Of a DNA stretch of 64,000 nucleotides, positions 1,141-34,457 are shown piece after piece. The stretch is from Heterodontus francisci (lineage: Eukaryota), in contig NC_090399.1 of assembly GCF_036365525.1 (NCBI RefSeq), forward strand, positions 66,582,862-66,646,861. Direction: 5' to 3'. Every line of letters starts with the position of its first letter. The first letter of the stretch is position 1. A program made the position numbers and the translations under genes. The notes under the pieces are model-generated. The model had not been told where the DNA came from. It saw only the letters and a list, made by a program, of their open reading frames with translations, and did no database searches.

Positions 1141-1266
1141 ACGGGACATTCCGAGATACTCCAGGATCTCCAGAAGGGACAAATCTGGGTTTGATTGTTG
1201 GAATTGTTGTTGCTGCCGTCGCTGTGATTGCTCTTGTCATCGGTGCTGTTGTGTGGAAGAGGAGAG
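1141..1266 (+). CDS. Connecting-peptide/transmembrane exon of a type I membrane protein, most likely MHC class I heavy chain
   Basis: Acceptor cttcctcattccccccacAG (1139-1140) and donor GTaggg (1267). The 126-nt phase 1-1 exon encodes (x)GTFRDTPGSPEGTNLGLIVGIVVAAVAVIALVIGAVVWKRR: a ~23-aa hydrophobic helix followed by a WKRR stop-transfer. If the upstream exon ends in G the first residue is D, fitting the W|DG junction after class I alpha3 domains. Too short for the ORF track. Confidence 0.8.
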
Positions 1267-1425
1267 GTAGGGAATGAGGGCAGAATCTGTCACTCTCGGG
1301 TATGAGCAGCTTAAAATATTACAGCACAAGGTCAGAACATTAGACACTTCACTACACAGGTGGGAAACTCACATACAGCCCAGTGATGGACAGGGAGTGA
1401 GGGGACTGGGAGAATGGGATAGGGA

Positions 1426-4400
1426 GTGAGCTGTTTGTAACTGATGTTCCCCCTGTGTGTGTACAGTAAGTTTGTGTGGGTGAGGGGGGGTGAGCTGTTT
1501 GTCACTGAAGTTCCCCCTGTGTGTGTACAGTAAGTTTGTGTGGGTGAGGGGGGAGGGGGGAGCTGTTTGGAACTGAAGTTCCCCCTATGTGTGTACAGTA
1601 AGTTTGTGTGGGTGAGGGGGGGTGGGGTGAGCTGTTTGTAACTGAAGTTCCCCCTGTGTGTGGACAGTAAGTTTGTGTGGGTGAGGGGGGGGGGTGTGAG
1701 CTGTTTGTAACTGACGTTCCCCCTGTGTGTGTACAGTAAGTTTGTGTGGGTGAGGGGGGGGTGAGCTGTTTGTAACTGAAGTTCCCCCTGTGTGTGTACA
1801 GTAAGTTTGTGTGGGTGAGGGGGGGGTGAGCTGTTTGTAACTGAAGTTCCCCCTGTGTGTGTACAGTAAGTTTGTGTGGGTGAGGGGGGGGGGGGTGAGC
1901 TGTTTGTAACTGACGTTCCCCCTGTGTGTGTACAGTAAGTTTGTGTGGGTGAGGGGGGGGTGAGCTGTTTGTAACTGAAGTTCCCCCTGTGTGTGTACAG
2001 TAAGTTTGTGTGGGTGAGGGGGGGGAGTGAGCTGTTTGTAACTGAAGTTACCCCTGTGTGTGTACAGTAAGTTTCTGTGGGTGAGGGGGGGGGGGAAGTG
2101 AGCTGTTTGTAACTGAAGTTCCCCCTGTGTGTGTACAGTAAGTTTGTGTGGGTGAGGGTGCGGGGGGGTGGGGTGAGCTGTTTGTAACTGAAGTTCCCCC
2201 TGTGTGTGTACAGTAAGTTTGTGTGGGTGAGGGTGCGGGGGGTGGGGTGAGCTGTTTGTAACTGAAGTTCCCCCTGTGTGTGTACAGTAAGTTTGTGTGG
2301 GTGAGGGGGGGTGAGCTGTTTGTAACTGAAGTTCCCCATGTGTGTGTACAGTAAGTTTGTGTGGGTGAGGGTGCGGGGGGTGGGGTGAGCTGTTTGTAAC
2401 TGAAGTTCCCCCTGTGTGTGCACAGTAAGTTTGTGTGGGTGAGGTGGGTGGGGGGGGGGGTGAGCTGTTTGTAACTGAAGTTCTCCCTGTGTGTGTACAG
2501 TAAGTTTGTGTGGGTGAGGGGGGGGGGGTGGTGAGCTGTTTGTAACTGAAGTTCCCCCTGTGTGTGTACAGTAAGTTTGTGTGGGTGAGGGGGGGGGTGA
2601 GCTGTTTGTAACTGAAGTTCCCCCTGTGTGTGTACAGTAAGTTTGTGTGGGTGAGGGGGGGGGGGTGAGCTGTTTGTAACTGAAGTTCCCCCTGTGTGTG
2701 TACAGTAAGTTTGTGTGGGTGAGGGTGGGGGGGGGAGGGGTGAGCTGTTTGGAACTGAAGTTCCCCCTGTGTGTGCACAGTAAGTTTGTGTGGGTGAGGT
2801 GGGGGGGGGGGGTGGGTGAGCTGTTTGTAACTGAAGTTCCCCCTGTGTGTGTACAGTGAGTTTGTGTGGGTGAGGGGGGGGGGAGGTGAGCTGTTCGTAA
2901 CTGACGTTCCCCCTGTGTGTGTACAGTGAGTTTGTGTGGGTGAGGGGGGGGGTGAGCTGTTTGTAACTGAAGTTCCCCCTGTGTGTGTACAGTAAGTTTG
3001 TGTTGGTGAGGGGGGTGAGCTGTTTGTAACTGAAGATCCCCTGTGTGTGTACAGTAAGTTTGTGTGGGTGAGGGGGGGTGACCTGTTTGTAACTGAAGTT
3101 CCCCCTGTGTGTGTACAGTACGTTTGTGTGGGTGAGGGGGGGTGAGCTGTTTGTAACTGAAGTTCCCCCTGTGTGTGTACAGTAAGTTTGAGTGGGTGAG
3201 GGGGGGGGGGGGTGAGCTGTTTGAAACTGAAGTTCCCCCCGTGTGTGTACAGTAAGTTTGTGTGGGTGAGGGGGGGGGGGGTGAGCTGTTTGTAACTGAA
3301 GTTCCGCCTGTGTGTGTACAGTACGTTTGTGTGGGTGAGGGGGGGTGAGCTGTTTGTAACTGAAGTTCCCCATGTGTGTGTACAGTAAGTTTGTGTGGGT
3401 GAGGGTGTGGGGGGTGGGGGGTGAGCTGTTTGTAACTGAAGTTCCCCCTGTGTGTGTACAGTAAGTTTGTGTGGGTGAGGGGGGGGGGTGAGCTGTTTGT
3501 AACTGAAGTTCCCCCTGTGTGTGTACAGTAAGTTTGTGTGGGTGTGGGGGGGGGTGAGCTGTTTGTAACTGAAGTTCCCCCTGTGTGTGTACAGTAAGTT
3601 TGTGTGGGTGAGGGGGGGGGTGAGTTGTTTGTAACTGAAGTTCCCCCTGTGTATGCACAGTATGTTTGTGTGGGTGAGGGGGGGTGAGCTGTTTGTAACT
3701 GAAGTTCTTTCTGTGTGTGTACAGTAAGTTTGTGTGGGTGAGGGGGGGGGGGGGGGTGAGCTGTATGTGACTGAAGTTCCCCCTGTGTGTGAACAGTAAG
3801 TTTGTGTGGGTGAGGGGGGGGGGGGGGTGAGCTGTTTGTAACTGAAGTTCCCCCTGTGTGTGTACAGTAAGTTTGTGTGGGTGAGGGTGTGGGGGGGGGG
3901 GTGAGCTGTTTGTAACTAAAGTTCCCCTTGTGTGTGTACAGTAAGTTTGTGTGGGTGAGGGGGGGCGGTGAGCTGTTTGTAACTGAAGTTCCCCCTGTGT
4001 GTGTCCAGTACGTTTGTGTGGGTGAGGGGGGGTGAGCTGTTTGTAACTGAAGTTCCCCCTGTGTGTGAACAGTAAGTTTGTGTGGGTGAGGGGGGGGGAG
4101 GTGAGCTGTTTGTAACTGAAGTTCCCCCTGTGTGTGAACAGTAAGTTTGTGTGGGTGAGGGGGGGGGGGGGGTGAGCTGTTTGTCACTGAAGTTCCCCCT
4201 GTGTGTGTACAGTAAGTTTGTGTGGGTGAGGGGGGGTGAGCTGTTTGTAACTGAAGTTCCCCCTGTGTGTGTACAGTAAGTTTGTGTGGGTGAGGGGGGG
4301 GGGGGGTGAGCTGTTTGTAACTGAAGTTCCCCCTGTGTGTGAACAGTAAGTTTGTGTGGGTGAGGGGGGGGGGGTGAGCTGTTTGTCACTGAAGTTCCCC

Positions 4401-7400
4401 CTGTGTGTGTACAGTAAGTTTGTGTGGGTGAGGGGGGGTGAGCTGTTTGTAACTGAAGTTCCCCCTGTGTGTGTACAGTAAGTTTGTGTGGGCGAGGGGG
4501 GGTGAGCTGTTTGTAACTGAAGTTCCCCCTGTGTGTGCACAGTAAGTTTGTGTTGGTGAGGGGGGGGGGGGGTGAGGGAGCTGTTTGTGACTGAAGTTCC
4601 CCCTGTGTGTGTACAGTGAGTTTGTGTGGGTGAGGGGGGTGAGCTGTTTGTAACTGAAGTTCCCCCTGTGTGTGTACAGTAAGTTTGTGTGGGTGAGCGG
4701 GGGGTGAGCTGTTTGTAACTGAAGTTCCCCCTGTGTGTGTACAGTAAGTTTGTGTGGGTGAGGGGGGGTGAGCTGTTTGTAACTGAAGTTCACCCTGTGT
4801 GTGTACAGTAGGTTTGTGTGGGTGAGGGGGGTTGAGCTGTTTGTAACTGAATTTCCCCCTGTGTGTGTACAGTAAGTTTGTGTGGGTGAGGGGGGGGAGT
4901 GAGCTGTTTGTAACTGAAGTTCCCCCTGTGTGTGTACAGTAAGTTTCTGTGGGTGAGGGGAGGGGGGGAGTGAGCTGTTTGTAACTGAAGTTCCCCCTGT
5001 GTGTGTACAGTAAGTTTGTGTGGGTGAGGGTGCGGGGGGTGGGGTGAGCTGTTTGTAACTGAAGTTCCCCCTGTGTGTGTACAGTAAGTTTGTGTGGGTG
5101 AGGGTGCGGGGGGTGGGGTGAGCTGTTTGTAACTGAAGTTCCCCCTGTGTGTGTACAGTAAGTTTGTGTGGGTGAGGGGGGGGTGAGCTGTTTGTAACTG
5201 AAGTTCCCCCTGTGTGTGTACAGTAAGTTTGTGTGGGTGAGGGTGCGGGGGGTGGGGTGAGCTGTTTGTAACTGAAGTTCCCCCTGTGTGTGCACAGTAA
5301 GTTTGTGTGGGTGAGGTGGGGGTGGGGGGGGGGTGGTGAGCTGTTTGTAACTGAAGTTCCCCCTGTGTGTGTACAGTAAGTTTGTGTGGGTGAGGGGGGG
5401 TGAGCTGTTTGTAACTGAAGTTCCCCCTGTGTGTGTACAGTAAGTTTGTGTGGGTGAGGGGGGGGTGAGCTGTTTGTAACTGAAGTTCCCCCTGTGTGTG
5501 TACAGTAAGTTTGTGTGGGTGAGGGGTGGTGAGCTGTTTGTAACTGAAGTTCCCCCTGTGTGTGTACAGTAAGTTTGTGTGGGTGAGGGGGGGGGTGAGC
5601 TGTTTGTAACTGAAGTTCTCCCTGTGTGTGTACAGTAAGTTTGTGTGGGTGAGGGGGGGGGGGTGGTGAGCTGTTAGTAACTGAAGTTCCCCCTGTGTGT
5701 GTACAGTAAGTTTGTGTGGGTGAGGGGGGGTGAGCTGTTTGTAACTGATGTTCCCCCTGTGTGTGTACAGTAAGTTTGTGTGGGTGAGGGGGGTGGGGTG
5801 AGCTGTTTGGAACTGAAGTTCACCCTGTGTGTGCACAGTAAGTTTGTGTGGGTGAGGTGGGGGGGGGGTGAGCTGTTTGTAACTGAAGTTCCCCCTGTGT
5901 GTGTACAGTGAGTTTGTGTGGGTGAGGGGGGGGGGGGGGGGGTGAGCTGTTTGTAACAGAAGTTCCCCCTGTGTGTGCACAGTAAATTTGTGTTGGTGAG
6001 GGGGGTGAGCTGTTTGTAACTGAAGTTCCCCCTGTGTGTGTACAGTAAGTTTGTGTGGGTGAGGGGGGGTGAGCTGTTTGTAACTGAAGTTCCCCCTGTG
6101 TGTGTACAGTAAGTTTGTGTGGGTGAGTGGGGGGGGGGGTGGGGGTGAGCTGTTTGTAACTGAAGTTCCCCCTGTGTGTGTACAGTAAGTTTGTGTGGGT
6201 GAGGGGGGGGGGGGGGTGAGCTGTTTGAAACTGAAGTTCCCCCCGTGTGTGTACAGTAAGTTTGTGTGGGTGAGGGGGGGGGGGTGAGCTGTTTGTAACT
6301 GAAGTTCCGCCTGTGTGTGTACAGTACGTTTGTGTGGGTGAGGGGGGGTGAGCTGTTTGTAACTGAAGTTCCCCCTGTGTGTGTACAGTAAGTTTGTGTG
6401 GGTGAGGGGGGGGGTGAGCTGTTTGTAACTGAAGTTCCCCCTGTGTGTGTCCAGTACGTTTGTGTGGGTGAGGGGGGGTGAGCTGTTTGTAACTGAAGTT
6501 CCCCCTGTGTGTGTACAGAAAGTTTGTGTGGGTGAGGGGGGGGGGTGAGCTGTTTGTAACTGAGGTTCCCCCTGTGTGTGTACAGTAGGTTTGTGTGGGT
6601 GAGGGGGGGGGGGTAGGCTGTTTGTAACTGAAGTTCCCCCTGTGTGTGAACAGTAAGTTTGTGTGGGTGAGCGGGGGGGGGGGGTGGTGAGCTGTTTGTA
6701 ACTGAAGTTCCCCCTGTGTGTGTACAGTAGGTTTGTGTGGGTGAGGGGGGGGGTGAGCTGTTTGTAACTGAAGTTCCCCCTGTGTGTGAACAGTAAGTTT
6801 GTGTGGGTGAGGGGGGGGGGTGAGTTGTTTGTAACTGAAGTTCCCCCTGTGTGTGCACAGTAAGTTTGTGTGGGTGAGCGGGGGAAGGGGTGAGCTGTTT
6901 GTAACTGAAGTTCTTTCTGTGTGTGTACAGTAAGTTTGTGTGGGTGAGGGGGGGTGAGCTGTTTGTAACTGAAGTACCCCCTGTATGTGTACAGTAAGTT
7001 TGTGTGGGTGAGGGGGGGGGTGAGCTGTTTGTAACTGAAGTTCCCCCTGTGTGTGTACAGTACGTTTGTGTGGTTGAGGGGGGGTGAGCTGTTTGTAACT
7101 GAAGTTCCCCCTGTGTGTGTACAGTAAGTTTGTGTGGGTGAGGGGGGGTGAGCTGTTTGTAACTGAAGTTCCCCCTGTGTGTGTACAGTACGTTTGTGTG
7201 GGTGAGGGGGGGTGAGCTGTTTGTGACTGAAGTTCCCCCTGTGTGTGTACAGTAAGTTTGTGTGGGTGAGGGGGGGTGAGCTGTTTGTAACTGAAGTTCC
7301 CCCTGTGTGTGTACAGTACGTTTGTGTGGGTGAGGGGGGGTGAGCTGTTTGTGACTGAAGTTCCCCCTGTGTGTGTACAGTACGTTTGTGTGGGTGAGGG

Positions 7401-10400
7401 GGGGTGAGCTGCTTGTAACTGAAGTTCCTCCTGTGTGTGTACAGTAAGTTTGTGTGGGTGAGGGGGGGTGAGCTGTTTGTAACTGAAGTTCCCCCTGTGT
7501 GTGTACAGTAAGTTTGTGTGGGTGAGGGTGTGGGGGGGGGGGTGAGCTGTTTGTAACTGACGTTCCCCCTGTGTGTGTACAGTAAGTTTGTGTGGGTGAG
7601 GGGGGGTGAGCTGTTTGTAACTGAAGTTCCCCCTGTGTGTGTACAGTAATTTTGTGTTGGTGAGGGGGGGGGGGGGGGGGTGAGGGAGCTGTTTGTGACT
7701 GAAGTTCCCCCTGTGTGTGTACAGTAAGTTTGTGTGGGTGAGGGGGGGGGGGGGGTGAGCTGTTTGTAACTGAAGTTCCCCCTATGTGTGTACAGTAAGT
7801 TTGTGTGGGTGAGGGGGGGGTGAGCTGTTTGTAACTGAAGTTCCCCCTATGTGTGTACAGTAAGTTTGTGTGGGTGAGGGGGGGTGAGCTGTTTGTAACT
7901 GAAGTTCCTCCTGTGTGTGTACAGTAAGTTTGTGTGGGTGAGGGGGGGTGAGCTGTTTGTAACTGAAGTTCCCCCTGTGTGTGTACAGTGAGTTTGTGTG
8001 GGTGAGGGGGGGGGGGAGGTGAGCTGTTCGTAACTGACTTTCCCCCTGTGTGTGTACAGTGAGTTTGTGTGGGTGAGGGGGGGGGGGGGTGAGCTGTTTG
8101 TAACTGAAGTTCCCCCTGTGTGTGCACAGTAAGTTTGTGTTGGTGAGGGGGGTGAGCTGTTTGTAACTGAAGTTCCCCCTGTGTGTGTACAGTAAGTTTG
8201 TGTGGGTGAGGGGGGGTGAGCTGTTTGTAACTGAAGTTCCCCCTGTGTGTGTACAGTAAGTTTGTGTGGGTGAGTGGGGGGGGGGGGGGTGAGCTGTTTG
8301 TAACTGAAGTTCCGCCTGTGTGTGTACAGTACGTTTGTGTGGGTGAGGGGGGGTGAGCTGTTTGTAACTGAAGTTCCCCCTGTGTGTGTACAGTAAGTTT
8401 GTGTGGGTGAGGGGGGGGGGGGGTGAGCTGTTTGTAACTGAAGTTCCCCCTGTGTGTGTACAGTAAGTTTGTGTGGGTGAGGGGGGGGGGGGGTGAGCTG
8501 TTTGTAACTGAAGTTCCCCCTGTGTGTGTCCAGTACGTTTGTGTGGGTGAGGGGGGGTGAGCTGTTTGTAACTGAAGTTCCCCCTGTGTGTGTACAGAAA
8601 GTTTGTGTGGGTGAGGGGGGGGGGTGAGCTGTTTGTAACTGAGGTTCCCCCTGTGTGTGTACAGTAGGTTTGTGTGGGTGAGGGGGGGGGGGGTAGGCTG
8701 TTTGTAACTGAAGTTCCCCCTGTGTGTGAACAGTAAGTTTGTGTGGGTGAGCGGGGGGGGGGGTGGTGAGCTGTTTGTAACTGAAGTTCCCCCTGTGTGT
8801 GTACAGTAGGTTTGTGTGGGTGAGGGGGGGGGTGAGCTGTTTGTAACTGAAGTTCCCCCTGTGTGTGTACAGTAAGTTTGTGTGGGTGAGGGGGGGGGGT
8901 GAGTTGTTTGTAACTGAAGTTCCCCCTGTGTGTGCACAGTAAGTTTGTGTGGGTGAGCGGGGGAAGGGGTGAGCTGTTTGTAACTGAAGTTCTTTCTGTG
9001 TGTGTACAGTAAGTTTGTGTGGGTGAGGGGGGGTGAGCTGTTTGTAACTGATGTTCCCCCTGTATGTGTACAGTAAGTTTGTGTGGGTGAGGGGGGGGGG
9101 TGAGCTGTTTGTAACTGAAGTTCCCCCTGTGTGTGTACAGTACGTTTGTGTGGTTGAGGGGGGGTGAGCTGTTTGTAACTGAAGTTCCCCCTGTGTGTGT
9201 ACAGTACGTTTGTGTGGGTGAGGGGGGGTGAGCTGTTTGTGACTGAAGTTCCCCCTGTGTGTGTACAGTGCGTTTGTGTGGGTGAGGGGGGGTGAGCTGT
9301 TTGTAACTGAAGTTCCTCCTGTGTGTGTACAGTAAGTTTGTGTGGGTGAGGGGGGGTGAGCTGTTTGTAACTGAAGTTCCCCCTGTGTGTGTACAGTAAG
9401 TTTGTGTGGGTGAGGGTGTGGGGGGGGGGTGAGCTGTTTGTAACTGACGTTCCCCCTGTGTGTGTACAGTAAGTTTGTGTGGGTGAGGGGGGGTGAGCTG
9501 TTTGTAACTGAAGTTCCCCCTGTGTGTGTACAGTAAGTTTGTGTTGGTGAGGGGGGGGGGGGGTGAGGGAGCTGTTTGTGACTGAAGTTCCCCCTGTGTG
9601 TGTACAGTAAGTTTGTGTGGGTGAGGGGGGGGGGTGAGCTGTTTGTAACTGAAGTTCCCCCTATGTGTGTACAGTAAGTTTGTGTGGGTGAGGGGGGGGG
9701 GGGGTGAGCTGTTTGTAACTGAAGTTCCCCCTATGTGTGTACAGTAAGTTTGTGTGGGTGAGGGTGTGGGGGGGGGGGGGGTGAGCTGTTTGTAACTGAC
9801 GTTCCCCCTGTGTGTGTACAGTAAGTTTGTGTGGGTGAGGGGGGGGGGGGTGAGCTGTTTGTAACTGAAGTTCCCCCTGTGTGTGTACAGTAAGTTTGTG
9901 TGGGTGAGGGGGGGGGTTGAGCTGTTTGTAACTGAAGTTCCCCCTATGTGTGTACAGTAAGTTTGTGTGGGTGAGGGTGTGGGGGGGGGGGGGGTGAGCT
10001 GTTTGTAACTGACGTTCCCCCTGTGTGTGTACAGTAAGTTTGTGTGGGTGAGGGGTGGGGGGTGAGCTGTTTGTAACTGAAGTTCCCCCTGTTTGTGTAC
10101 AGTAAGTTTGTGTGGGTGAGGGGGGGTGAGCTGTTTGTAACTGAAGTTCCCCCTGTGTGTGTACAGTAAGTTTGTGTGGGTGAGGGGGGGTGAGCTGTTT
10201 GTAACTGAAGTTCCCCCTGTGTGTGTACAGTAAGTTTGTGTGGGTGAGGGGGGTTGAGCTTTTTATAACTGAATTTCCCCCTGTGTGTGTACAGTAAGTT
10301 TGTGTGGGTGAGGGGGGGGGAGTGAGCTGTTTGTAACTGAAGTTCCCCCTGTGTGTGTACAGTAAGTTTGTGTGGGTGAGGGGGGGTGAGCTGTTTGTAA

Positions 10401-22400: not shown

Positions 22401-25400
22401 GTTTGTGTGGGTGAGGGGGGGGGGGGTGAGCTGTTTGTAACTGAAGTTCCCCCTGTGTGTGTACAGTAAGTTTGTGTGGGTGAGGGGGGGGGGTGAGCTG
22501 TTTGTAACTGAAGTTCCCCCTGTGTGTGTACAGTAAGTTTGTGTGGGTGAGGGGGGGGGGGGGGTGAGCTGTTTGTAACTGAAGTTCCCCCTGTGTGTGT
22601 ACAGGAAGTTTGTGTGGGTGAGGGGGGGGTGAGCTGTTTGTAACTGAAGTTCCCCCTGTGTGTGTACAGTACGTTTGTGTGGGTGAGGGGGGGTGAGCTG
22701 TTTGTAACTGAAGTTCCCCCTGTGTGTGTACTGTAAGTTTGTGTGGGTGAGGGGGGGTGAGCTGTTTGTAACTGAAGTTCCCCCTGTGTGTGTACAGTAG
22801 GTTTGTGTGGGTGAGGGGGGGGTGAGGGAGCTGTTTGTGACTGAGGTTCCCCCTGTGTGTGTACAGTAAGATTGTGTGGGTGAGGGGGGGGTGAGGGAGC
22901 TGTTTGTGACTGAAGTTGCCCCTGTGTGTGTACAGTAAATTTGTGTGGGTGAGGGGGGGGGTGAGCTGTTTGTAACTGAAGTTCCCCCTGTGTGTGCACA
23001 GTAAGTTTGTGTGGGTGAGGGGGGGGTGAGCTGTTTGTAACTGAAGTTCCCCCTGTGTGTGAACAGTAAGTTTGTGTGGGTGAGGGGGGGGGGTGAGCTG
23101 TTTGTAACTGAAGATCCCCCTGTGTGTGTACAGTAAGTTTGTGTGGGTGAGGGGGGGGGGGTGAGCTGTTTGTAACTGAAGTTCCCCCTGTGTGTGTACA
23201 GTAAGTTTGTGTGGGTGGGGGGGGGGTGAGCTGTTTGTAACTGAAGTACCCCCTGTGTGTGTACAGTAAGTTTGTGTGGGTGAGGGGGGGTGAGCTGTTT
23301 GTAACTGAAGTTCCCCCTGTGTGTGTACAGTAAGTTTGTGTGGGTGAGCAGGGGGGGGGGTGAGCTGTTTGTAACTGAAGTTCCCCGTGTGTGTACAGTA
23401 AGTTTGTGTGGGTGAGGGTCGGGGGGTGGGGGGGTTGTGAGCTGTTTGTAACTGAAGTTTCCCCTTGTGTGTGTCCAGTAAGTTTGTGTGGGTGAGGGGG
23501 GGTGAGCTGTTTGTAACTGAAGTTCCCCCTGTGTGTGTACAGTAAGTTTGTGTGGGTGAGGGGGGGGGGGGGGTGAGGGAGCTGTTTGTAACTGAAGTTT
23601 CCCCTTGTGTGTGTACAGTAAGTTTGTGTGGGTGAGGGGGGGTGAGCTGTTTGTAACTGAAGTTCCCCCTGTGTGTGTACAGTAAGTTTGTGTGGGTGAT
23701 GGGGGGGGGGTGAGCTGTTTGTAACTGAAGGTCCCCCTGTGTGTGTACAGTAAGTTTGTGTGGGTGAGGGGGGGGGATTTTGGTGAGCTGTTTGTAACTG
23801 AAGTTCCCCCTGTGTGTGTACAGTAAGTTTGTGTGGGTGAGGGGGGTGGGGGGTGAGCTGTTTGTAACTGAAGGTCCCCCTGTGTGTGTGCAGTAAGTTT
23901 GTGTGTGTGAGGGGGGGGGGGTGAGCTGTTTGTAACTGAAGTTCCCCCTGTGTGTACAGTAAGTTTGTGTGGGTGAGGGCGGGGGGGGGGGGGGTGAGCT
24001 GTTTGTAACTGAAGTTCCCCCTGTGTGTGTACAGTAAGTTTGTGTGGGTGGGGGGGGGGGGGGGTGAGCTGTTTGTAACTGAAGTTCCCCCTGTGTGTGT
24101 ACAGTAAGTTTGTGTGGGTGAGGGGGGGGGGGGTGAGCTGTTTGTAACTGAAGTTCCCCCTGTGTGTGTACAGTAAGTTTGTGTGGGTGAGGGGGGGGGG
24201 GTGAGCTGTTTGTAACTGAAGTTCCCCCTGTGTGTGTACAGTAAGTTTGTGTGGGTGAGGGGGGGGGGTGAGCTGTTTGTAACTGAAGTTCCCCCTGTGT
24301 GTGTACAGGAAGTTTGTGTGGGTGAGGGGGGGGTGAGGGAGCTGTTTGTGACTGAGGTTCCCCCTGTGTGTGTACAGTAAGTTTGTGTGGGTGAGGGGGG
24401 GTGAGCTGTTTGTAACTGAAGTTCCCCCTGTGTGTGTACTGTAAGTTTGTGTGGGTGAGGGGGGGTGAGCTGTTTGTAACTGAAGTTCCCCCTGTGTGTG
24501 TACAGTAAGTTTGTGTGGGTGAGGGGGGGGTGAGGGAGCTGTTTGTGACTGAGGTTCCCCCTGTGTGTGTACAGTAAGTTTGTGTGGGTGAGGGGGGGGT
24601 GAGGGAGCTGTTTGTGACTGAAGTTGCCCCTGTGTGTGTACAGTAAATTTGTGTGGGTGAGGGGGGGGGTGAGCTGTTTGTAACTGAAGTTCCCCCTGTG
24701 TGTGTACAGTAAGTTTGTGTGGGTGAGGGGGGGGTGAGCTGTTTGTAACTGAAGTTCCCCCCGTGTGTGTACAGTAAGTTTGTGTGGGTGAGGGGGGGGG
24801 GGGGGTGAGCTGTTTGTAACTGAAGTTCCCCCTGTGTGTGTACAGTAAGTTTGTGTGGGTGAGGGGGGGGGGGGGTGAGCTGTTTGTAACTGAAGTTCCC
24901 CCTGTGTGTGTCCAGTACGTTTGTGTGGGTGAGGGGGGGTGAGCTGTTCGTAACTGAAGTTCCCCCTGTGTGTGTACAGTACGTTTGTGTGGGTGAGGGG
25001 GGGTGAGCTGTTTGTGACTGAAGTTCCCCCTGTGAGTGAACAGTAAGTTTGTGTGGGTGAGGGGGGAGGGGTGAGCTGTTTGTAACTGAAGATCCCCCTG
25101 TGTGTGTACAGTAAGTTTGTGTGGGTGAGGGGGGGGGGGTGAGCTGTTTGTAACTGAAGTTCCCCCTGTGTGTGTACAGTAAGTTTGTGTGGGTGGGGGG
25201 GGGGTGAGCTGTTTGTAACTGAAGTTCCCCCTGTGTGTGTACAGTAAGTTTGTGTGGGTGAGGGGGGTGGGGGGTGAGCTGTCTGTAACTGAAGTTCCCC
25301 CTGTGTGTGCACAGTAAGTTTGTGTGGGTGAGGGGGGGGTGAGCTGTCTGTAACTGAAGTTCCCCCTGTGTGTGTACAGTAAGTTTGTGTGGGTGAGGGG

Positions 25401-28400
25401 GGGGTGGTGAGCTGTTTGTAACTGAAGTTCCCCCTGTGTGTGTACAGTAAGTTTGTGTGGGTGGGGGGGGGGGGGTGAGCTGTTTGTAACTGAAGTTCCC
25501 CCTGTGTGTGTACAGTAAGTTTGTGTGGGTGAGGGGGGGTGAGCTGTTTGTAACTGAAGTTCCCCCTGTGTGTGTACAGTAAGTTTGTGTGGGTGAGGGT
25601 GTGGGTGAGGGGGGGTGAGCTGTTTGTAACTGAAGTTCCCCCTGTGTGTGTACAGTAAGTTTGTGTGGGTGAGGGTGTGGGTGAGGGGGGGGGTGAGCTG
25701 TTTGTAACTGAAGTTCCCCCTGTGTGTGTACAGTAAGTTTGTGTGGGTGGGGGGGGGGTGAGCTGTTTGTAACTGAAGTTCCCCCTGTGTGTGTACAGTA
25801 AGTTTGTGTGGGTGAGGGGGGTGGGGTGTGAGCTGTCTGTAACTGAAGTTCCCCCTGTGTGTGCACAGTAAGTTTGTGTGGGTGAGGGGGGGTGAGCTGT
25901 CTGTAACTGAAGTTCCCCCTGTGTGTGTACAGTACGTTTGTGTGGGTGAGGGGGGGTGAGCTGTTTGTAACTGAAGTTCCCCCTGTGTGTGTACAGTAAG
26001 TTTGTGTGGGTGAGGGGGGGTGAGCTGTTTGTAACTGAAGTTCCCCCTGTGTGTGTACAGTAAGTTTGTGTGGGTGGGGTGGGGTGAGCTGTTTGTAACT
26101 GAAGTTCCCCCTGTGTGTGTACAGTAAGTTTGTGTGGGTGAGGGGGGGTGAGCTGTTTGTAACTTAAGTTCCCCCTGTGTGTGTACAGTAAGTTTGTGTG
26201 GGTGAGGGGGGTGGGGGGTGAGCTGTTTGTAACTGAAGTTCCCCCTGTGTGTGTACAGTAAGTTTGTGTGGGTGAGGGGGGGGGGGGTGAGCTGTTTGTA
26301 ACTGAAGTTCCCCCTGTGTGTGTACAGTAAGTTTGTGTGGGTGGGGGGTTGGTGAGCTGTTTGTAACTGAAGTTCCCCCTGTGTGTGTACAGTAAGTTTG
26401 TGTGGGTGAGGGGGGGTGAGCTGTTCGTAACTGAAGTTCCCCCTGTGTGTGTACAGTAAGTTTGTGTGGGTGAGGGGGGGGGGGGGGTGAGCTGTCTGTA
26501 ACTGAAGTTCCCCCTGTGTGTGTACAGTAAGTTTGTGTGGGTGAGGGGGGTGAGCTGTTTGTAACTGAAGTTCCCCCTGTATGTGTACACTTCGTTTGTG
26601 TGGGTGTGGGGGGGGGTGAGCTGTTTGTGACTGAAGTTCCCCCTGTGTGTGGACAGTAAGTTTGTGTGGGTGAGGTGGGGGGGGGGGGGTGAGCTGTTTG
26701 TAACTGAAGTTCCCCCTGTGTGTGTACAGTAAGTTTGTGTGGGTGAGGTGGGGGGGGAGGTGAGCTGTTTGTAACTGAAGTTCCCCCTGTGTGTGTACAG
26801 TAAGTTTGTGTGGGTGAGGGGGAGGGGGTGAGCTGTTTGTAACTGAAGTTCCCCCTGTGTGTGTACAGTAAGTTTGTGTGGGTGAGGGGGAGGGGGTGAG
26901 CTGTTTGTAACTGAAGTTCCCCCTGTGTGTGTACAGTAAGTTTGTGTGGGTGAGGGGGGGTGAGCTGTTTGTAACTGAAGTTCCCCCTGTGTGTGTACAG
27001 TAAGTTTGTGTGGGTGAGGGGAGGGGGTGAGCTGTTTGTAACTGAAGTTCCCCCTGTGTGTGTACAGTAAGTTTGTGTGGATGAGGGTGTGGGGGGGGGG
27101 GGGGGGGGGTGAGCTGTTTGTAACTGAAGTGCCCCCTGTGTGTGTCCAGTAAGTTTGTGTGGGTGAGGGGGGGTGAGCTGTTTGTAACTGAAGTTCCCCC
27201 TGTGTGTGTACAGTAAGTTTGTGTGTGTGAGGGGGTGGTGAGCTGTTTGTAACTGAAGTTCCCCCTGTGTGTGTACAGTAAGTTTGTGTGGATGAGGGGG
27301 GGAGGGGTGAGCTGTTTGTAACTGAAGTTCCCCCTGTGTGTGTACAGTAAGTTTGTGTGGATGAGGGGGTGGGGTGAGCTGTTTGTAACTGAAGTGCCCC
27401 CTGTGTGTGTACAGTAAGTTTGTGTGGGTGAGGGGGGGGGGGGGTGAGCTGTTTGTAACTGAAGTGCCCCCTGTGTGTGTACAGTAAGTTTGTGTGGGTG
27501 AGGGGGGGGGGTGAGCTGTTTGTAACTGAAGTTCCCCCTGTGTGTGTACAGTAAGTTTGTGTGGGTGAGGGGGGGTGAGCTGTTTGTAACTGAAGTGCCC
27601 CCTGTGTGTGTACAGTAAGTTTGTGTGGGTGAGGGGGGGTGAGCTGTTTGTAACTGAAGTGCCCCCTGTGTGTGTACAGTAAGTTCGTGTGGGTGAGGGG
27701 GTGGGGTGAGCTGTTTGTAACTGAAGTGCCCCCTGTGTGTGTACAGTAGGTTTGTGTGGGTGTGGGGGGGGGGGGGGGGTGAGCTGTTTGTAACTGAAGT
27801 GCCCCCTGTGTGTGTACAGTAAGTTTGTGTGGGTGAGGGGGGGGGTGTGCTGTTTGTAACTGAAGTGCCCCCTGTGTGTGTACAGTAAGTTTGTGTGGGT
27901 GAGGGGGGGTGAGTTGTTTGTAACTGAAGTTCCCCCTGTGTGTGTACATTAAGTTTGTGTGGGTGAGGGAGGTGAGCTGTTTGTAACTGAAGTGCCCCCT
28001 GTGTGTGTACAGTAAGTTTGTGTGGGTGAGGGGGGGTGAGTTGTTTGTATCTGAAGTTCCCCCTTTGTGTGTACATTAAGTTTGTGTGGGTGAGGGGGGG
28101 TGAGCTGTTTGTAACTGAAGTGCCCCCTGTGTGTGTACAGTAAGTTTGTGTGGGTGAGGGGGGGTGAGCTGTTTGTAACTGGAGTTCCCCCTGTGTGTGT
28201 ACAGTAAGTTTGTGTGGGTGAGGGGGGGTGGTGAGCTGTTTGTAACTGAAGTTCCCCCTGTGTGTGTACAGTAAGTTTGTGTGGGTGAGGGGGGGTGAGC
28301 TGTTTGTAACTGAAGTTCCCCCTGTGTGTGTACAGTAAGTTTGTGTGGGTGAGGGGGGGTGAGCTGTTTGTAACTGAAGTGCCCCCTGTGTGTGTCCAGT

Positions 28401-31400
28401 AAGTTTGTGTGGGTGAGGGGGGGTGGTGAGCTGTTTGTAACTGAAGTTCCCCCTGTGTGTGTACAGTAAGTTTGTGTGGGTGAGGGGGGGTGAGCTGTTT
28501 GTAACTGAAGTTCCCCCTGTGTGTGTACAGTAAGTTTGTGTGGGTGAGGGGGGGTGAGCTGTTTGTAACTGAAGTGCCCCCTGTGTGTGTCCAGTAAGTT
28601 TGTGTGGGTGAGGGGGGGGGGGTGAGCTGTTTGTAACTGAAGTTCCCCCCGTGTGTGTACAGTAAGTTTGTGTGGGTGAGGGGGGGTGAGCTGTTTGTAA
28701 CTGAAGTTCCCCCTGTGTGTGTACAGTAAGTTTGTGTGGGTGAGGGGGGGTGTGCTGTTTGTAACTGAAGTTCCCCCTGTGTGTGTACAGTACGTTTGTG
28801 TGGGTGAGGGGGGGTGAGCTGTTTGTAACTGAAGTGCCCCCTGTGTGTGTACAGTAAGTTTGTGTGGGTGAGGGGGGGTGAGCTGTTTGTAACTGAAGTT
28901 CACCCTGTGTGTGTACAGTAAGTTTGTGTGGGTGAGGGGGGGTGAGCTGTTTGTAACTGAAGTTCCCCCTGTGTGTGTACAGTAAGTTTGTGTGGGTGAG
29001 GGGGGGGTGAGCTGTTTGTAACTGAAGTTCCCCCTGTGTGTGTACAGTAAGTTTGTGTGGGTGAGGGGGGGTGAGCTGTTTGTAACTGAAGTGCCCCCTG
29101 TGTGTGTCCAGTAAGTTTGTGTGGGTGAGGGGGTGGGGTGAGCTGTTTGTAACTGAAGTTCCCCCCGTGTGTGTACAGTAAGTTTGTGTGGGTGAGGGGG
29201 GGTGAGCTGTTTGTAACTGAAGTGCCCCCTGTGTGTGTCCAGTAAGTTTGTGTGGGTGAGGGGGGGTGAGCTGTTTGTAACTGAAGTTCCCCCTGTGTGT
29301 GTACAGTAAGTTTGTGTGGGTGAGGGGGGGTGTGCTGTTTGTAACTGAAGTTCCCCCTGTGTGTGTACAGTAAGTTTGTGTGGGTGAGGGGGGGTGAGCT
29401 GTTTGTAACTGAAGTGCCCCCTGTGTGTGTACAGTAAGTTTGTGTGGGTGAGGGGGGGGTGAGCTGTTTGTAACTGAAGTGCCCCCTGTGTGTGTACAGT
29501 AAGTTTGTGTGGGTGAGGGGGGGTGAGCTGTTTGTAACTGAAGTGCCCCCTGTGTGTGTACAGTAAGTTTGTGTGGGTGAGGGGGAGTGAGCTGTTTGTA
29601 ACTGAAGTGCCCCCTGTGTGTGTACAGTAAGTTTGTGTGGGTGAGGGGGGGTGAGCTGTTTGTAACTGAAGTGCCCCCTGTGTGTGTACAGTAAGTTTGT
29701 GTGGGTGAGGGGGGGGTGAGCTGTTTGTAACTGAAGTTCCCCCTGTGTGTGTACAGTAAGTTTGTGTGGGTGAGGGGGTGGGGTGAGCTGTTTGTAACTG
29801 AAGTGCCCCCTGTGTGTGTACAGTAAGTTTGTGTGGGTGTGGGGGGGGGGTGAGCTGTTTGTAACTGAAGTGCCCCCTGTGTGTGTACAGTAAGTTTGTG
29901 TGGGTGAGGGGGGGTGAGTTGTTTGTAACTGAAGTTCCCCCTGTGTGTGTACATTAAGTTTGTGTGGGTGAGGGGGGGTGAGCTGTTTGTAACTGAAGTG
30001 CCCCCTGTGTGTGTACAGTAAGTTTGTGTGGGTGAGGGGGGGTGAGTTGTTTGTAACTGAAGTTCCCCCTGTGTGTGTACATTAAGTTTGTGTGGGTGAG
30101 GGGGGGTGAGCTGTTTGTAACTGAAGTGCCCCCTGTGTTTGTACAGTAAGTTTGTGTGGGTGAGGGGGGGTGAGCTGTTTGTAACTGAAGTTCACCCTGT
30201 GTGTGTACAGTAAGTTTGTGTGGGTGAGGGGGGGTGAGCTGTTTGTAACTGAAGTTCCCCCTGTGTGTGTACAGTAAGTTTGTGTGGGTGAGGGGGGGGT
30301 GAGCTGTTTGTAACTGAAGTTCCCCCTGTGTGTGTACAGTAAGTTTGTGTGGGTGAGGGGGGGTGAGCTGTTTGTAACTGAAGTGCCCCCTGTGTGTGTC
30401 CAGTAAGTTTGTGTGGGTGAGGGGGTGGGGTGAGCTGTTTGTAACTGAAGTTCCCCCCGTGTGTGTACAGTAAGTTTGTGTGGGTGAGGGGGGGTGAGCT
30501 GTTTGTAACTGAAGTGCCCCCTGTGTGTGTCCAGTAAGTTTGTGTGGGTGAGGGGGGGTGAGCTGTTTGTAACTGAAGTTCCCCCTGTGTGTGTACAGTA
30601 AGTTTGTGTGGGTGAGGGGGGGTGTGCTGTTTGTAACTGAAGTTCCCCCTGTGTGTGTACAGTAAGTTTGTGTGGGTGAGGGGGGGTGAGCTGTTTGTAA
30701 CTGAAGTGCCCCCTGTGTGTGTACAGTAAGTTTGTGTGGGTGAGGGGGGGTGAGCTGTTTGTAACTGAAGTTCCCCCTGTGTGTGTACAGTAAGTTTGTG
30801 TGGGTGAGGGGGGGTGAGCTGTTTGTAACTGAAGTGCCCCCTGTGTGTGTACAGTAAGTTTGTGTGGGTGAGGGGGGGTGAGCTGTTTGTAACTGAAGTG
30901 CCCCCTGTGTGTGTACAGTAAGTTTGTGTGGGTGAGGGGGGGTGAGCTGTTTGTAACTGAAGTGCCCCCTGTGTGTGTACAGTAAGTTTGTGTGGGTGAG
31001 GGGGGGTGAGCTGTTTGTAACTGAAGTGCCCCCTGTGTGTGTACAGTAAGTTTGTGTGGGTGAGGGGGGGTGAGCTGTTTGTAACTGAAGTGCCCCCTGT
31101 GTGTGTACAGTAAGTTTGTGTGGGTGAGGGGGGGTGAGCTGTTTGTAACTGAAGTTCCCCCTGTGTGTGTACAGTAAGTTTGTGTGGGTGAGGGGGTGGG
31201 GTGAGCTGTTTGTAACTGAAGTGCCCCCTGTGTGTGTACAGTAAGTTTGTGTGGGTGTGGGGGGGGGGTGAGCTGTTTGTAACTGAAGTGCCCCCTGTGT
31301 GTGTACAGTAAGTTTGTGTGGGTGAGGGGGGGTGAGTTGTTTGTAACTGAAGTTCCCCCTGTGTGTGTACATTAAGTTTGTGTGGGTGAGGGGGGGTGAG

Positions 31401-34068
31401 CTGTTTGTAACTGAAGTGCCCCCTGTGTGTGTACAGTAAGTTTGTGTGGGTGAGGGGGGGGTGAGTTGTTTGTAACTGAAGTTCCCCCTGTGTGTGTACA
31501 TTAAGTTTGTGTGGGTGAGGGGGGGTGAGCTGTTTGTAACTGAAGTGCCCCCTGTGTGTGTACAGTAAGTTTGTGTGGGTGAGGGGGGGTGAGCTGTTTG
31601 TAACTGAAGTTCCCCCTGTGTGTGTACAGTAAGTTTGTGTGGGTGAGGGGGGGTGAGCTGTTTGTAACTGAAGTTCACCCTGTGTATGTACAGTAAGTTT
31701 GTGTGGGTGAGGGGGGGTGAGCTGTTTGTAACTGAAGTTCACCCTGTGTGTGTACAGTAAGTTTGTGTGGGTGAGGGGGGGTTGAGCTGTTTGTAACTGG
31801 AGTTCCCCCTGTGTGTGTACAGTAAGTTTGTGTGGGTGAGGGGGGGTGGTGAGCTGTTTGTAACTGAAGTTCCCCCTGTGTGTGTACAGTAAGTTTGTGT
31901 GGGTGAGGGGGGGTGAGCTGTTTGTAACTGAAGTTCCCCCTGTGTGTGTACAGTAAGTTTGTGTGGGTGAGGGGGGGTGAGCTGTTTGTAACTGAAGTGC
32001 CCCCTGTGTGTGTCCAGTAAGTTTGTGTGGGTGAGGGGGGGGTGAGCTGTTTGTAACTGATGTTCCCCCCGTGTGTGTACAGTAAGTTTGTGTGGGTGAG
32101 GGGGGGTGAGCTGTTTGTAACTGAAGTGCCCCCTGTGTGTTTCCAGTAAGTTTGTGTGGGTGAGGGGGGGTGAGCTGTTTGTAACTGAAGTTCCCCCTGT
32201 GTGTGTACAGTAAGTTTGTGTGGGTGAGGGGGGGTGTGCTGTTTGTAACTGAAGTTCCCCCTGTGTGTGTACAGTAAGTTTGTGTGGGTGAGGGGGGGTG
32301 AGCTGTTTGTAACTGAAGTGCCCCCTGTGTGTGTACAGTAAGTTTGTGTGGGTGAGGGGGGGTGAGCTGTTTGTAACTGAAGTTCACCCTGTGTGTGTAC
32401 AGTAAGTTTGTGTGGGTGAGGGGGGGTGAGCTGTTTGTAACTGAAGTTCCCCCTGTGTGTGTACAGTAAGTTTGTGTGGGTGAGGGGGGGTGAGCTGTTT
32501 GTAACTGAAGTTCCCCCTGTGTGTGTACAGTAAGTTTGTGTGGGTGAGGGGGGGTGAGCTGTTTGTAACTGAAGTGCCCCCTGTGTGTGTCCAGTAAGTT
32601 TGTGTGGGTGAGGGGGTGGGGTGAGCTGTTTGTAACTGAAGTTCCCCCCGTGTGTGTACAGTAAGTTTGTGTGGGTGAGGGGGGGTGAGCTGTTTGTAAC
32701 TGAAGTGCCCCCTGTGTGTGTCCAGTAAGTTTGTGTGGGTGAGGGGGGGTGAGCTGTTTGTAACTGAAGTTCCCCCTGTGTGTGTACAGTAAGTTTGTGT
32801 GGGTGAGGGGGGGTGTGCTGTTTGTAACTGAAGTTCCCCCTGTGTGTGTACAGTAAGTTTGTGTGGGTGAGGGGGGGTGAGCTGTTTGTAACTGAAGTGC
32901 CCCCTGTGTGTGTACAGTAAGTTTGTGTGGGTGAGGGGGGGTGAGCTGTTTGTAACTGAAGTTCCCCCTGTGTGTGTACAGTAAGTTTGTGTGGGTGAGG
33001 GGGGGTGAGCTGTTTGTAACTGAAGTTCCCCCTGTGTGTGTACAGTAAGTTTGTGTGGGTGAGGGGGGGTGAGCTGTTTGTAACTGAAGTGCCCCCTGTG
33101 TGTGTCCAGTAAGTTTGTGTGGGTGAGGGGGGTGGTGAGCTGTTTGTAACTGAAGTTCCCCCTGTGTGTGTACAGTAAGTTTGTGTGGGTGAGGGGGGGT
33201 GAGCTGTTTGTAACTGATGTGCCCCCTGTGTGTGTCCAGTAAGTTTGTGTGGGTGAGGGGGGGTGAGCTGTTTGTAACTGAAGTTCCCCCTGTGTGTGTA
33301 CAGTAAGTTTGTGTGGGTGAGGGGGGGGGGGTGAGCTGTTTGTAACTGAAGTTCCCCCTGTGTGTGTACAGTAAGTTTGTGTGGGTGAGGGGGTGGGGTG
33401 AGCTGTTTGTAACTGAAGTGCCCCCTGTGTGTGTACAGTAAGTTTGTGTGGGTGAGGGGGGGGGGGGGGGGTGAGCTGTTTGTAACTGAAGTGCCCCCTG
33501 TGTGTGTACAGTAATTTTGTGTGGGTGAGGGGGGTGAGTTGTTTGTAACTGAAGTTCCCCCTGTGTGTGTACATTAAGTTTGTGTGGGTGAGGGGGGGTG
33601 AGCTGTTTGTAACTGAAGTGCCCCCTGTGTGTGTACAGTAAGTTTGTGTGGGTGAGGTGGGGTGAGCTGTTTGTAACTGAAGTGCCCCCTGTGTGTGTAC
33701 AGTAAGTTTGTGTGGGTGAGGTGGGGTGAGCTGTTTGTAACTGAAGTGCCCCCTGTGTGTGTACAGTAAGTTTGTGTGGGTGAGGGGGGGTGAGCTGTTT
33801 GTAACTGAAGTTCCCCCTGTGTGTGTACAGTAAGTTTGTGTGGGTGAGGGGGGGTGAGCTGTTTGTAACTGAAGTGCCCACTGTGTGTGTCCAGTAAGTT
33901 TGTGTGGGTGAGGGGGTGTGAGCTGTTTGTAACTGAAGTTCCCCCTGTGTGTGTACAGTAAGTTTGTGTGGGTGAGGGGGGTGAGCTGTTTGTAACTGAA
34001 GTTCCCCCTGTGTGTGTACAGTAAGTTTGTGTGGGTGAGGGGGGGTGAGCTGTTTGTAACTGAAGTTC
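1426..34068 (+). repeat. Giant intronic G-rich minisatellite, unit TGAGCTGTTTGTAACTGAAGTTCCCCCTGTGTGTGTACAGTAAGTTTGTGTGGGTGA(G)n; 64 bp when n=7; ~490-500 copies
   Basis: Period 64 read directly (AGTAAG at 30661, 30725, 30789). The G-run varies from ~6 to >15. Copy number estimated as ~32.6 kb / ~66 bp. Consensus composition on the + strand is 25 G, 21 T, 10 A, 8 C. Confidence 0.99.
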
Positions 34069-34086
34069 TCTCTGTTTCTTGTGTAG

Positions 34087-34122
34087 GAGGAAAGATGAAA
34101 TCTGGTTACAGCCCAGCAAATC
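34087..34122 (+). CDS. First cytoplasmic-tail exon (MHC class I exon 6-like, Tyr motif)
   Basis: Acceptor ttctctctgtttcttgtgtAG (34085-34086), a 36-nt phase 1-1 exon, then donor GTa at 34123 just before the N gap. Spliced to the TM exon it reads ...WKRR-GGKMKSGYSPAN. GYxxA matches the conserved YXXA motif of MHC class I cytoplasmic tails. Confidence 0.8.
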
Positions 34123-34125
34123 GTA

Positions 34126-34359: not shown

Positions 34360-34457
34360 CTTTGTCTTTGTCTGTGTTTCTCTCTCACCCTCTCTGTTAC
34401 TCTTTCTCTCACTTTCCCTCTGTCTCCCTCTCTCTCTCTCTCTCTGCCTCTCTACAG
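34360..34457 (+). repeat. CT-rich low-complexity/polypyrimidine tract ending in a candidate acceptor (ctctacAG)
   Basis: Imperfect (CT)n run immediately after the gap, ending in CAG at 34455-34457. Confidence 0.8.

What the first reader, a model, noticed from the sequence alone, without database searches (positions are those of the whole stretch)
1426..34125. The minisatellite unit is an amplified 'empty exon cassette': ~500 copies of the tail exon's acceptor fused to a perfect donor
Seen: the real acceptor reads GTGAGCTGTTTGTAACTGAAGTTC-tctctgtttcttgtgtAG and every repeat unit reads GTGAGCTGTTTGTAACTGAAGTTC-cccctgtgtgtgtacAG, so the true exon is entered from within a repeat unit. In the repeat this AG overlaps a perfect GTAAGT donor by one shared G (CAGTAAGT). 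Two further GTGAG donor-like sites flank the G-run, and the real exon's donor also begins GTA before the gap. Inference: the unit arose from the branch point/acceptor/donor context of the tail exon, giving hundreds of decoy splice sites. Splicing the TM exon (ending ...AGAG) to a decoy AG would regenerate GA|GTAAGT, a recursive-like donor shifted by -1 nt. The decoys may be silenced because their CCCCCT tract can pair with the downstream AGGGGG and they contain UG repeats (TDP-43-type sites), whereas the true acceptor has a U-rich tract without C5. This could be a repeat-encoded splicing ratchet or a rheostat for tail isoforms.
Basis: partly seen in the sequence, partly recalled or inferred. 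Interest (0 to 1): 0.82.

Follow-up and report, generated by a model that had tools for sequence, protein, structure and literature searches.

The report
Giant minisatellite intron, spliced normally
A shark MHC class I-like gene has a 32.8-kb intron made almost wholly of 487 copies of a 64-base G-rich repeat whose last copy runs into the real splice acceptor, yet RNA contigs show the two flanking exons joined exactly as expected, so the hundreds of splice-like motifs look like silent by-products, not a splicing device.

Summary
A head-to-tail array of 487 units (59-82 bp, mode 64) fills 1426-34069. It starts 160 nt after the donor of a transmembrane exon (1141-1266). Its last, partial unit is identical to the unit consensus for 27 nt, then becomes the real pyrimidine tract and AG (34086) of a short cytoplasmic exon. 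CAGTAAGT is intact in 83.5% of units, not in every unit.

- The branch-point part of the real acceptor is repeat sequence. The similarity of the two pyrimidine tracts is weak (p about 0.02).
- Nothing ties the "donor" half to a real donor. The exon shows no likeness to the unit.
- The splice-like octamer is no better conserved than the rest of the unit.
- The proposed C5/G-run hairpin forms about equally at decoys (-14.6 kcal/mol) and at the true site (-13.6).
- Spliced contigs from two runs of one sample show the canonical junction with the last G of the exon kept. This argues against the -1 ratchet as the main route.
- No junction into the repeat was seen, but contigs cannot exclude rare ones.

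Best reading: an ordinary G-rich intronic minisatellite that grew next to the acceptor. The closest known case is the human F7 intron 7 VNTR. This scan has already noted similar satellite-filled MHC class I introns on other DNA of this genome.

The parts
1141..1266 (+). Transmembrane exon (phase 1 in, phase 1 out). Frame 3 reads GTFRDTPGSPEGTNLGLIVGIVVAAVAVIALVIGAVVWKRR. The donor is GAG|GTAGGG at 1267.
   Evidence: Sequence. Contigs in four runs match 1140-1266 without a difference and break at both borders. The loose end before 1140 is an upstream exon ending ...IRDW.
1267..1425 (+). Unique 5' part of the intron. Its last 40 nt are G-rich and loosely GGGAGTGAGG-like.
   Evidence: No significant likeness to the unit.
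1426..34069 (+). Minisatellite of 487 units, consensus GTGAGCTGTTTGTAACTGAAGTTCCCCCTGTGTGTGTACAGTAAGTTTGTGTGGGTGAG + G(3-17). Composition is 41% G and 12% C on the sense strand. The last 27 nt form a partial unit.
34043..34086 (+). True 3' splice region. The terminal partial unit (27 nt identical to the consensus, holding the TGTAACTGA branch-point candidate) is followed by a U-rich tract, TCTCTGTTTCTTGTGTAG.
   Evidence: 14 of 17 pyrimidines, 10 U, +1 G. Its use is shown by the spliced contigs.
34087..34125 (+). First cytoplasmic-tail exon, purine-rich at its start (GAGGAAAGATGAAA). Joined to the TM exon it reads ..WKRR GGKMKSGYSPAN. Its 3' end is hidden by the N gap (34126-34359).
   Evidence: The loose end behind 1267 in X1 and X3 equals 34088-34117. 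Translation.

Best explanation
This is an ordinary G-rich intronic minisatellite. It expanded in place, by unequal exchange or slippage in blocks of several units, from sequence lying just upstream of the acceptor of the first cytoplasmic exon of an expressed MHC class I-like gene. It grew until it filled the intron.

Growth and homogenisation stop where selection on splicing begins. The terminal unit therefore keeps the repeat's branch-point region but has its own U-rich tract and AG.

Each unit carries one acceptor-like AG, one GTAAGT and two GTGAG. These are by-products of the unit's sequence. They stay silent, at least as the main route.

Inferred reasons for the silence, from the established exon-definition model:
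- The AG and the GT share a G, so no exon lies between them.
- The decoy tract is G-interrupted and followed by U.
- No purine-rich exon follows a decoy, and G-runs and UG runs surround it.
- The true AG has a better tract, a +1 G and a GAR-rich exon behind it.

Shown: the anatomy, the lack of extra conservation, and the canonical mRNA junction. Inferred: the mode of expansion and the reasons for silence.
For: - Array anatomy and borders.
- Growth in place: variants sit in domains and recur in multi-unit patterns. For example, T23G occurs only twice outside the last 110 or so units, and six other variants do not occur in those units.
- No constraint on the splice-like motif.
- Canonical TM-to-tail junction in spliced contigs of two runs. 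No join into the repeat. The repeat itself appears only as a collapsed contig of depth 20-31, against 80-148 for the exon, so it is far rarer per copy than the exon.
- The decoy donor is weaker than the true donor.
- The decoy tract is poorer than the true one.
- No poly(A) signal in 32.6 kb, so the intron can be transcribed through.
- Precedent for a silent splice-site-bearing VNTR at an exon border: human F7 intron 7 (PMC1557585).
- The rest of the window is also full of minisatellites.
Against: - The RNA evidence is from assembled contigs of one sample. Contigs drop rare forms, so low-level use of decoys is not excluded.
- Three GTRAG motifs in one 64-nt unit is more than base composition predicts. 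My estimate of about 0.3 expected is a hand calculation, not a tool result.
- Other first-stage notes report several more satellites that abut splice junctions of MHC class I genes in this genome. Such recurrence may call for a specific cause.
- The direction of derivation cannot be settled without an outgroup: the acceptor context may have seeded the array, or the array may have overwritten the acceptor context.
Confidence: 0.78

Rival explanations
1. One reading: the array is a repeat-encoded splicing ratchet, or a rheostat that sets the ratio of tail isoforms through its hundreds of AG/GTAAGT sites.
For: - About 406 intact CAGTAAGT sites stand in the sense orientation.
- Joining the TM exon to a decoy does regenerate GA|GTAAGT, with a U1 duplex of -6.4 kcal/mol.
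- The -1 product would give a four-residue tail, WKRREER*, which would be a real isoform change.
- The first decoy lies only 200 nt from the donor.
Against: - The defining juxtaposition AG|GT of recursive sites is not met; the sites overlap by one base.
- The mRNA contigs keep the G.
- The motif is not specially conserved.
- The hairpin does not separate decoys from the true site.
- No junction into the repeat was reported.
Confidence: 0.05
2. The array matters as DNA or nascent RNA, not through its splice motifs. A 32-kb stretch that is G-rich on the non-template strand would be prone to R-loops and G-quadruplexes. It could slow or pause transcription, or act as a recombination hot spot between the extracellular exons and the tail exons. 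The same property could drive its own expansion in a transcribed gene.
For: - GC skew is +0.52 to +0.57 over the whole array.
- There are 137 canonical G4 motifs on the sense strand and none on the other.
- Each unit carries a G-run followed by TGAGCT. By my own recollection this resembles mammalian switch-region pentamers; it was not tested.
- Another first-stage note says the G-rich strand is the sense strand in three further MHC-intron satellites (unchecked).
Against: - No experiment or population data bear on it.
- G-rich strand asymmetry is common in minisatellites generally.
- The orientation could be chance (one in two for each array).
Confidence: 0.12
3. Assembly artefact: the array is real, but its length or internal order is wrong because of long-read collapse or expansion. 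The gap right after the tail exon may mark a misjoin, in which case the tail exon may not lie where it is shown.
For: - A 234-N gap begins 39 nt after the acceptor.
- G-run lengths (4-19) are of the kind long reads miscount.
Against: - 272 distinct unit sequences arranged in ordered variant domains are not what a collapsed or invented array gives.
- The partial unit and the tail exon are contiguous sequence before the gap.
- RNA joins the TM exon to exactly this exon.
- Independent contigs show unit-to-unit joins ('goes back 64').
Confidence: 0.05

Closest known systems
Human F7 intron 7 37-bp VNTR, whose first unit spans the exon 7 donor (Borensztajn et al. 2006, PMC1557585)
   Same: An intronic minisatellite whose end unit overlaps a real splice signal. 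The intron therefore holds repeated pseudo splice sites in the sense orientation. These normally stay silent, and the authentic site next to the exon is chosen (abstract).
   Different: - F7 is at the donor side; here the array is at the acceptor side.
- By my recollection, F7 has a handful of units; here there are 487 units filling 32.6 kb.
- In F7 the pseudo-sites are identical to the true site. Here the decoy tract differs from the true one, and the chosen site is the last of the series, not the first.
- Each unit here also carries donor-like sites.
Recursive splice sites (ratchet points) of long introns (Drosophila and human; e.g. PMC8605326, PMC6110456)
   Same: An acceptor-like tract plus AG stands next to a strong GTAAGT inside a long intron.
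   Different: - Ratchet points juxtapose AG|GT, so the regenerated donor uses none of the exon. Here AG and GT share the G (CAGTAAGT), so re-splicing would remove one exon base.
- The mRNA contigs keep that base.
- Ratchet points are single conserved sites, not a homogenised array.
G-rich hypervariable minisatellites (Jeffreys-type), from my own knowledge
   Same: Unit of tens of bases, strong purine/G strand asymmetry, variant units interspersed in blocks, and length change by unequal exchange.
   Different: The size (32.6 kb), the position filling a whole intron of an immune gene, and the border at a splice acceptor. Polymorphism was not tested.
Other satellite-filled MHC class I introns noted by this scan in the same genome (s1-872915, s1-873570 and others)
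   Same: Giant tandem arrays in introns of expressed shark class I genes. Some were built from intron-exon border sequence, and splicing was still correct according to the follow-up notes.
   Different: Those are other loci and other units, and I did not check them. In one of them a scrap of the exon lies inside the unit; no exon sequence is in the unit here.

Membership tests
Minisatellite (VNTR) | Head-to-tail units of about 10-100 bp in a long array | tested here: met
   487 units of 59-82 bp with no interruption.
Minisatellite (VNTR) | Interspersed variant units and block structure, showing growth in place | tested here: met
   272 distinct units; variants lie in domains and in recurring multi-unit patterns.
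Minisatellite (VNTR) | Copy number varies among individuals | not testable with these tools
Recursive splice site (ratchet point) | Acceptor AG directly followed by donor GT (YnNCAG|GTAAGT), so that the exon is restored intact | tested here: not met
   The units read CAGTAAGT. AG and GT share one G, and the regenerated donor would be GA|GTAAGT, one base inside the exon.
Recursive splice site (ratchet point) | Splicing intermediates, lariats or saw-tooth coverage at the site | tested here: inconclusive
   Only contigs were served. No join from 1266 into the unit was reported, and the canonical join is present. Rare intermediates cannot be seen in contigs.
Recursive splice site (ratchet point) | The site is conserved above its surroundings | tested here: not met
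   CAGTAAGT is intact in 83.5% of units, below the median octamer of the unit. This compares copies within one array, not species.
Exon-border VNTR with pseudo splice sites (F7 intron 7 type) | An end unit of the array overlaps the authentic splice signal | tested here: met
   The terminal partial unit is 27 of 27 identical to the consensus and ends 17 nt before the AG. It holds the branch-point candidate. Likeness beyond it is weak (p = 0.018).
Exon-border VNTR with pseudo splice sites (F7 intron 7 type) | Pseudo-sites identical in sequence to the authentic site | tested here: not met
   The decoy tract is CCCCTGTGTGTGTACAG|T; the true tract is CTCTGTTTCTTGTGTAG|G.
Exon-border VNTR with pseudo splice sites (F7 intron 7 type) | Pseudo-sites silent in normal mRNA | tested here: met
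   At contig level, in one sample: only the canonical junction was found for this gene.
MHC class I gene (host gene) | Alpha1-alpha3 domains ahead of a TM exon and short cytoplasmic exons | tested here: inconclusive
   - The domain exons lie outside the window.
- The TM exon, its phase-1 borders, an upstream exon ending ..RDW and a tail GGKMKSGYSPAN fit class I by my own knowledge.
- Pfam, the Atlas and the word search on the 41-residue exon gave nothing.
- The class I assignment also appears in other notes of the scan, which are unchecked.

The most novel reading that the evidence does not exclude
In this shark, introns of expressed MHC class I genes are recurrently taken over by giant minisatellites. 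These are seeded at splice junctions and have the G-rich strand as the sense strand. That would point to a transcription-linked (R-loop or G4) expansion process specific to these genes. Alternatively, the arrays may serve as recombination or timing modules between the peptide-binding exons and the tail exons. The array studied here would be one instance of that.
Probability: 0.12. Interest if true: 0.75.

Novelty: new variant of a known kind. Interest (0 to 1): 0.4.

Why it matters
If the ordinary reading holds, the value is as a natural experiment. The spliceosome removes a 32.8-kb intron that offers about 400 acceptor-like and about 1300 donor-like sites of strength similar to the real donor. 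It still picks the one true acceptor at the far end.

This is a far larger version, on the acceptor side, of the F7 intron 7 model used to study splice-site choice. Minigenes with graded unit numbers could test exon definition against scanning models.

The pattern seems to recur in class I genes of the same genome. That raises a testable question about why these genes attract junction-seeded, G-rich-sense satellites.

There is no evidence at present that the array regulates the cytoplasmic tail.

Tried and rejected
- Gene identity from the TM exon alone gave nothing. Pfam returned only weak TM-type chance hits, the Atlas had no usable hit, and the word search found no candidate in the allowed length band.
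- Rfam found no family anywhere in the window.
- My first attempt at a per-position profile, using a best-match regex, returned only perfect units and was discarded. It was redone by pairwise alignment.
- I tested whether the 'donor half' of the unit comes from the tail exon and its visible GTA, or from the TM exon's own donor region. No likeness rose above shuffles.
- I tested whether the C5:G-run hairpin could explain the choice of the true site. It is nearly equal at both.
- MaxEntScan and SpliceAI are not on hand. I used U1 duplex energies instead, plus a position table recalled from memory that is only approximate.
- Two contigs in X2 and X4 run on behind 1266 with other letters (mixed consensus, agreement 0.63). 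At least one belongs to a paralogue that differs at 7 of 75 bases. These letters have no reference, so I did not search with them and left that step out.
- The exons were never joined for a database search. They were joined only in a small script, for the three short translations.
- Whether the satellite occurs at non-genic loci could not be tested.

Full report
**What is there**

Tandem Repeats Finder reports one array at 1422-34075 with period 64, 486.5 copies and 90% matches. Anchoring on the most constant 20-mer gives 487 units of 59-82 bp (mode 64) with no interruption. Length varies through a G-run of 3 to 17.

The consensus unit is GTGAGCTGTTTGTAACTGAAGTTCCCCCTGTGTGTGTACAGTAAGTTTGTGTGGGTGAG followed by the G-run. 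The sense strand is 41% G and 12% C, with GC skew +0.52 to +0.57 along the whole array.

The array begins 160 nt after GAG|GTAGGG, the donor of an exon at 1141-1266. In frame 3 that exon encodes a transmembrane segment.

The array ends with a partial unit that matches the consensus at 27 of 27 positions. The sequence then turns into TCTCTGTTTCTTGTGTAG|GAGGAAAGATG.... An N gap starts 39 nt later, at 34126-34359. I did not fill it.

**Check of the observation**

So are the overlap of AG with GTAAGT and the two GTGAG sites around the G-run. Two wordings are too strong:
- 'Every unit': the exact 24-mer is in 296 units, the exact decoy tract in 320, and CAGTAAGT in 406.
- 'Perfect donor': only the intron hexamer is perfect. 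With ACA on the exon side the predicted U1 duplex is -5.6 kcal/mol. The real TM donor gives -9.8, the two GTGAG sites give -9.3 and -9.8, and an ideal site gives -14.0.

The unit occurs nowhere else in the 64 kb.

**Is the array real, and did it grow here?**

There are 272 distinct unit sequences. Variants sit in domains. T23G occurs only twice outside the last 110 or so units, while six other variants do not occur in those units. Variants also recur in multi-unit patterns, the mark of block duplications inside the array. Contigs from public runs also show unit-to-unit joins. A wholly artefactual array is unlikely, though G-run lengths and the exact copy number may carry long-read error.

**Where did the unit come from?**

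- The 27 nt before the true tract are repeat sequence. They hold the best branch-point candidate, TGTAACTGA, about 27 nt before the AG.
- Beyond them, the true tract plus AG aligns to the unit's tract plus AG only weakly: z = 2.45, with 1.8% of shuffles scoring as well.
- The tail exon with its visible GTA shows no likeness to what follows the unit's AG (z = -0.4).
- The 5' part of the intron, donor included, shows no likeness to the unit (z = 0.6).

So the acceptor-proximal intron and the unit are related. The 'cassette with the exon's donor' is not supported. The GTAAGT is simply the G of the AG followed by TAAGT. Which came first, the acceptor context or the array, cannot be settled without another species.

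**Is the splice-like motif kept by selection?**

I aligned 486 units to the consensus. Mean identity per site is 0.981. CAGTAAGT is intact in 83.5% of units. That is below the median of the 52 octamers of the unit, which range from 0.71 to 0.98. Donor position +4 is one of the most variable sites, with 36 units reading GTACGT. Variants that destroy the AG or the GT have spread to several units each. There is no sign of constraint on the motif within the array.

**What does RNA show?**

One search found four runs of one sample that hold the exon. Laid on 1-1495, their contigs match 1140-1266 without a difference and break at both exon borders.
- Before 1140 they continue into an upstream exon ending ...IRDW.
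- In X1 and X3 a contig runs through 1267 and then reads AGGAAAGATGAAATCTGGTTACAGCCCAGC.
- Together with the matched G, this is the tail exon from 34087 on.

The gene is therefore expressed, and the 32.8-kb intron is removed to give the canonical join, encoding ..WKRR GGKMKSGYSPAN. A -1 ratchet product would have ended its match at 1266, not 1267. It would encode WKRREER*.

The laid stretch included the first unit, yet no join from 1266 into it was reported. The repeat appears only as a collapsed contig of depth 20-31 in two runs, against 80-148 for the exon. Per copy it is therefore far rarer than the exon, and no stable repeat RNA piles up.

Limits: these are contigs, from one sample and one study. 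Rare forms and lariats cannot be seen, and 75 loose ends and 97 pieces were not listed.

Two contigs in X2 and X4 continue behind 1266 with other letters. At least one belongs to a paralogue that differs at 7 of 75 positions and has much higher depth. I did not search with these unreferenced letters.

**Why would the decoys be silent?**

The favoured structure pairs the upstream G-run plus GAGCU with AGUUC plus C5, leaving the branch-point region in the loop. It is worth -14.6 kcal/mol at a decoy and -13.6 at the true site, where UCUCU replaces C5. The tract's unpaired probability is 0.35-0.37 at three of the four decoys tested, against 0.45 at the true site. This does not discriminate.

What does differ:

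| Feature | True site | Decoy |
|---|---|---|
| Pyrimidines at -20..-4 | 14 of 17 | 12 of 17 |
| U at -20..-4 | 10 | 7 |
| Base at +1 | G | U |
| What follows | purine-rich exon | UG runs and G-runs |

At a decoy, AG and GT share a base, so no exon can be defined between them. From the established exon-definition model I infer that this is enough to explain the silence. That step is inference, not shown.

If a unit-long pseudo-exon (63 nt) were used, it would stop the frame after five codons, VSLCG*.

The array holds no AATAAA or ATTAAA.

**Comparison with what is known**

- The nearest described case is the 37-bp VNTR of human F7 intron 7. Its first unit spans the exon 7 donor, so identical pseudo-donors follow the real one and stay silent (PMC1557585). 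The shark array is the acceptor-side counterpart and far larger. Its decoys differ from the true site, and donor-like sites come as a bonus.
- It is not a recursive splice site, because the defining AG|GT juxtaposition is not met.
- It fits G-rich minisatellites in every feature I could test.

**Context from the scan**

Other notes on this genome are AI notes and mostly unchecked. They report the same stretch as an MHC class I-like gene with a single-minisatellite intron. They also report several other class I introns filled by satellites that abut or derive from splice junctions. Two follow-ups found splicing still correct, and one note says the G-rich strand is the sense strand in three more arrays.

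So the scan has found this kind of thing before on other DNA. I did not verify those loci. If the recurrence is real, it is the more interesting question, and it motivates the novel case. The 137 sense-strand G4 motifs against none on the other strand fit a transcription-linked process but do not show it.

**Verdict**

The origin claim is supported in part. The ratchet or rheostat claim is not supported, and for the main mRNA it is contradicted. This is a new variant of a known kind and a useful natural splicing test case. Interest is moderate.

Noticed in passing
window 1192-1266 (contigs): A paralogous transcript differs at 7 of 75 bases in the TM exon. It has a different 5' half and a different continuation behind 1266. 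Its contig depth in the same sample is about 4 to 13 times higher in three of the four runs (equal in X4), so a sister gene is the more strongly expressed one.
   Followed up: no
window 35281-36752: A 70-bp tandem array, 21 copies, 95% alike, lies about 1 kb downstream of the gap and after AATAAA signals at about 35063 and 35107.
   Followed up: no
window 39149-42374, 48010-49952, 53453-56080, 62205-63162: Four arrays of a 33-bp C-rich unit (TCAAACACAATCCCCTTGCAGAGTTCACCCCCT) lie inside a segmental duplication. 39729-46390 matches 53453-60105 at 93%, and 46695-49952 matches 52134-55377 at 90%.
   Followed up: partly
By my recollection the last are of the kind found in LINE ORF1. The gene's downstream flank is a transposon and duplication zone.
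   Followed up: partly
window 430-560 and 900-1000: Many contigs 90-95% alike, with unlike flanks, pile up here. These are interspersed repeats in the intron upstream of the TM exon.
   Followed up: no
window 34360-34460: Right after the gap a long CT-rich tract with (TC)n ends in CTACAG at 34457. This is a candidate acceptor of a further tail or 3' exon. It was not verified, because the loose-end letters shown stop inside the first tail exon.
   Followed up: no
window 1426-34069: Each unit joins a G-run to TGAGCT. By my own recollection this resembles the GGGGT/GAGCT pentamers of mammalian immunoglobulin switch regions, which are also G-rich on the non-template strand. It is a resemblance only and was not tested.
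   Followed up: no
window 46465-46638, 51552-51819, 60543-60829: 56/77-bp tandem repeats with the motif CGGCACACGGAGAGCGGACCTGTGTGAGAA recur in each copy of the duplicated block.
   Followed up: no
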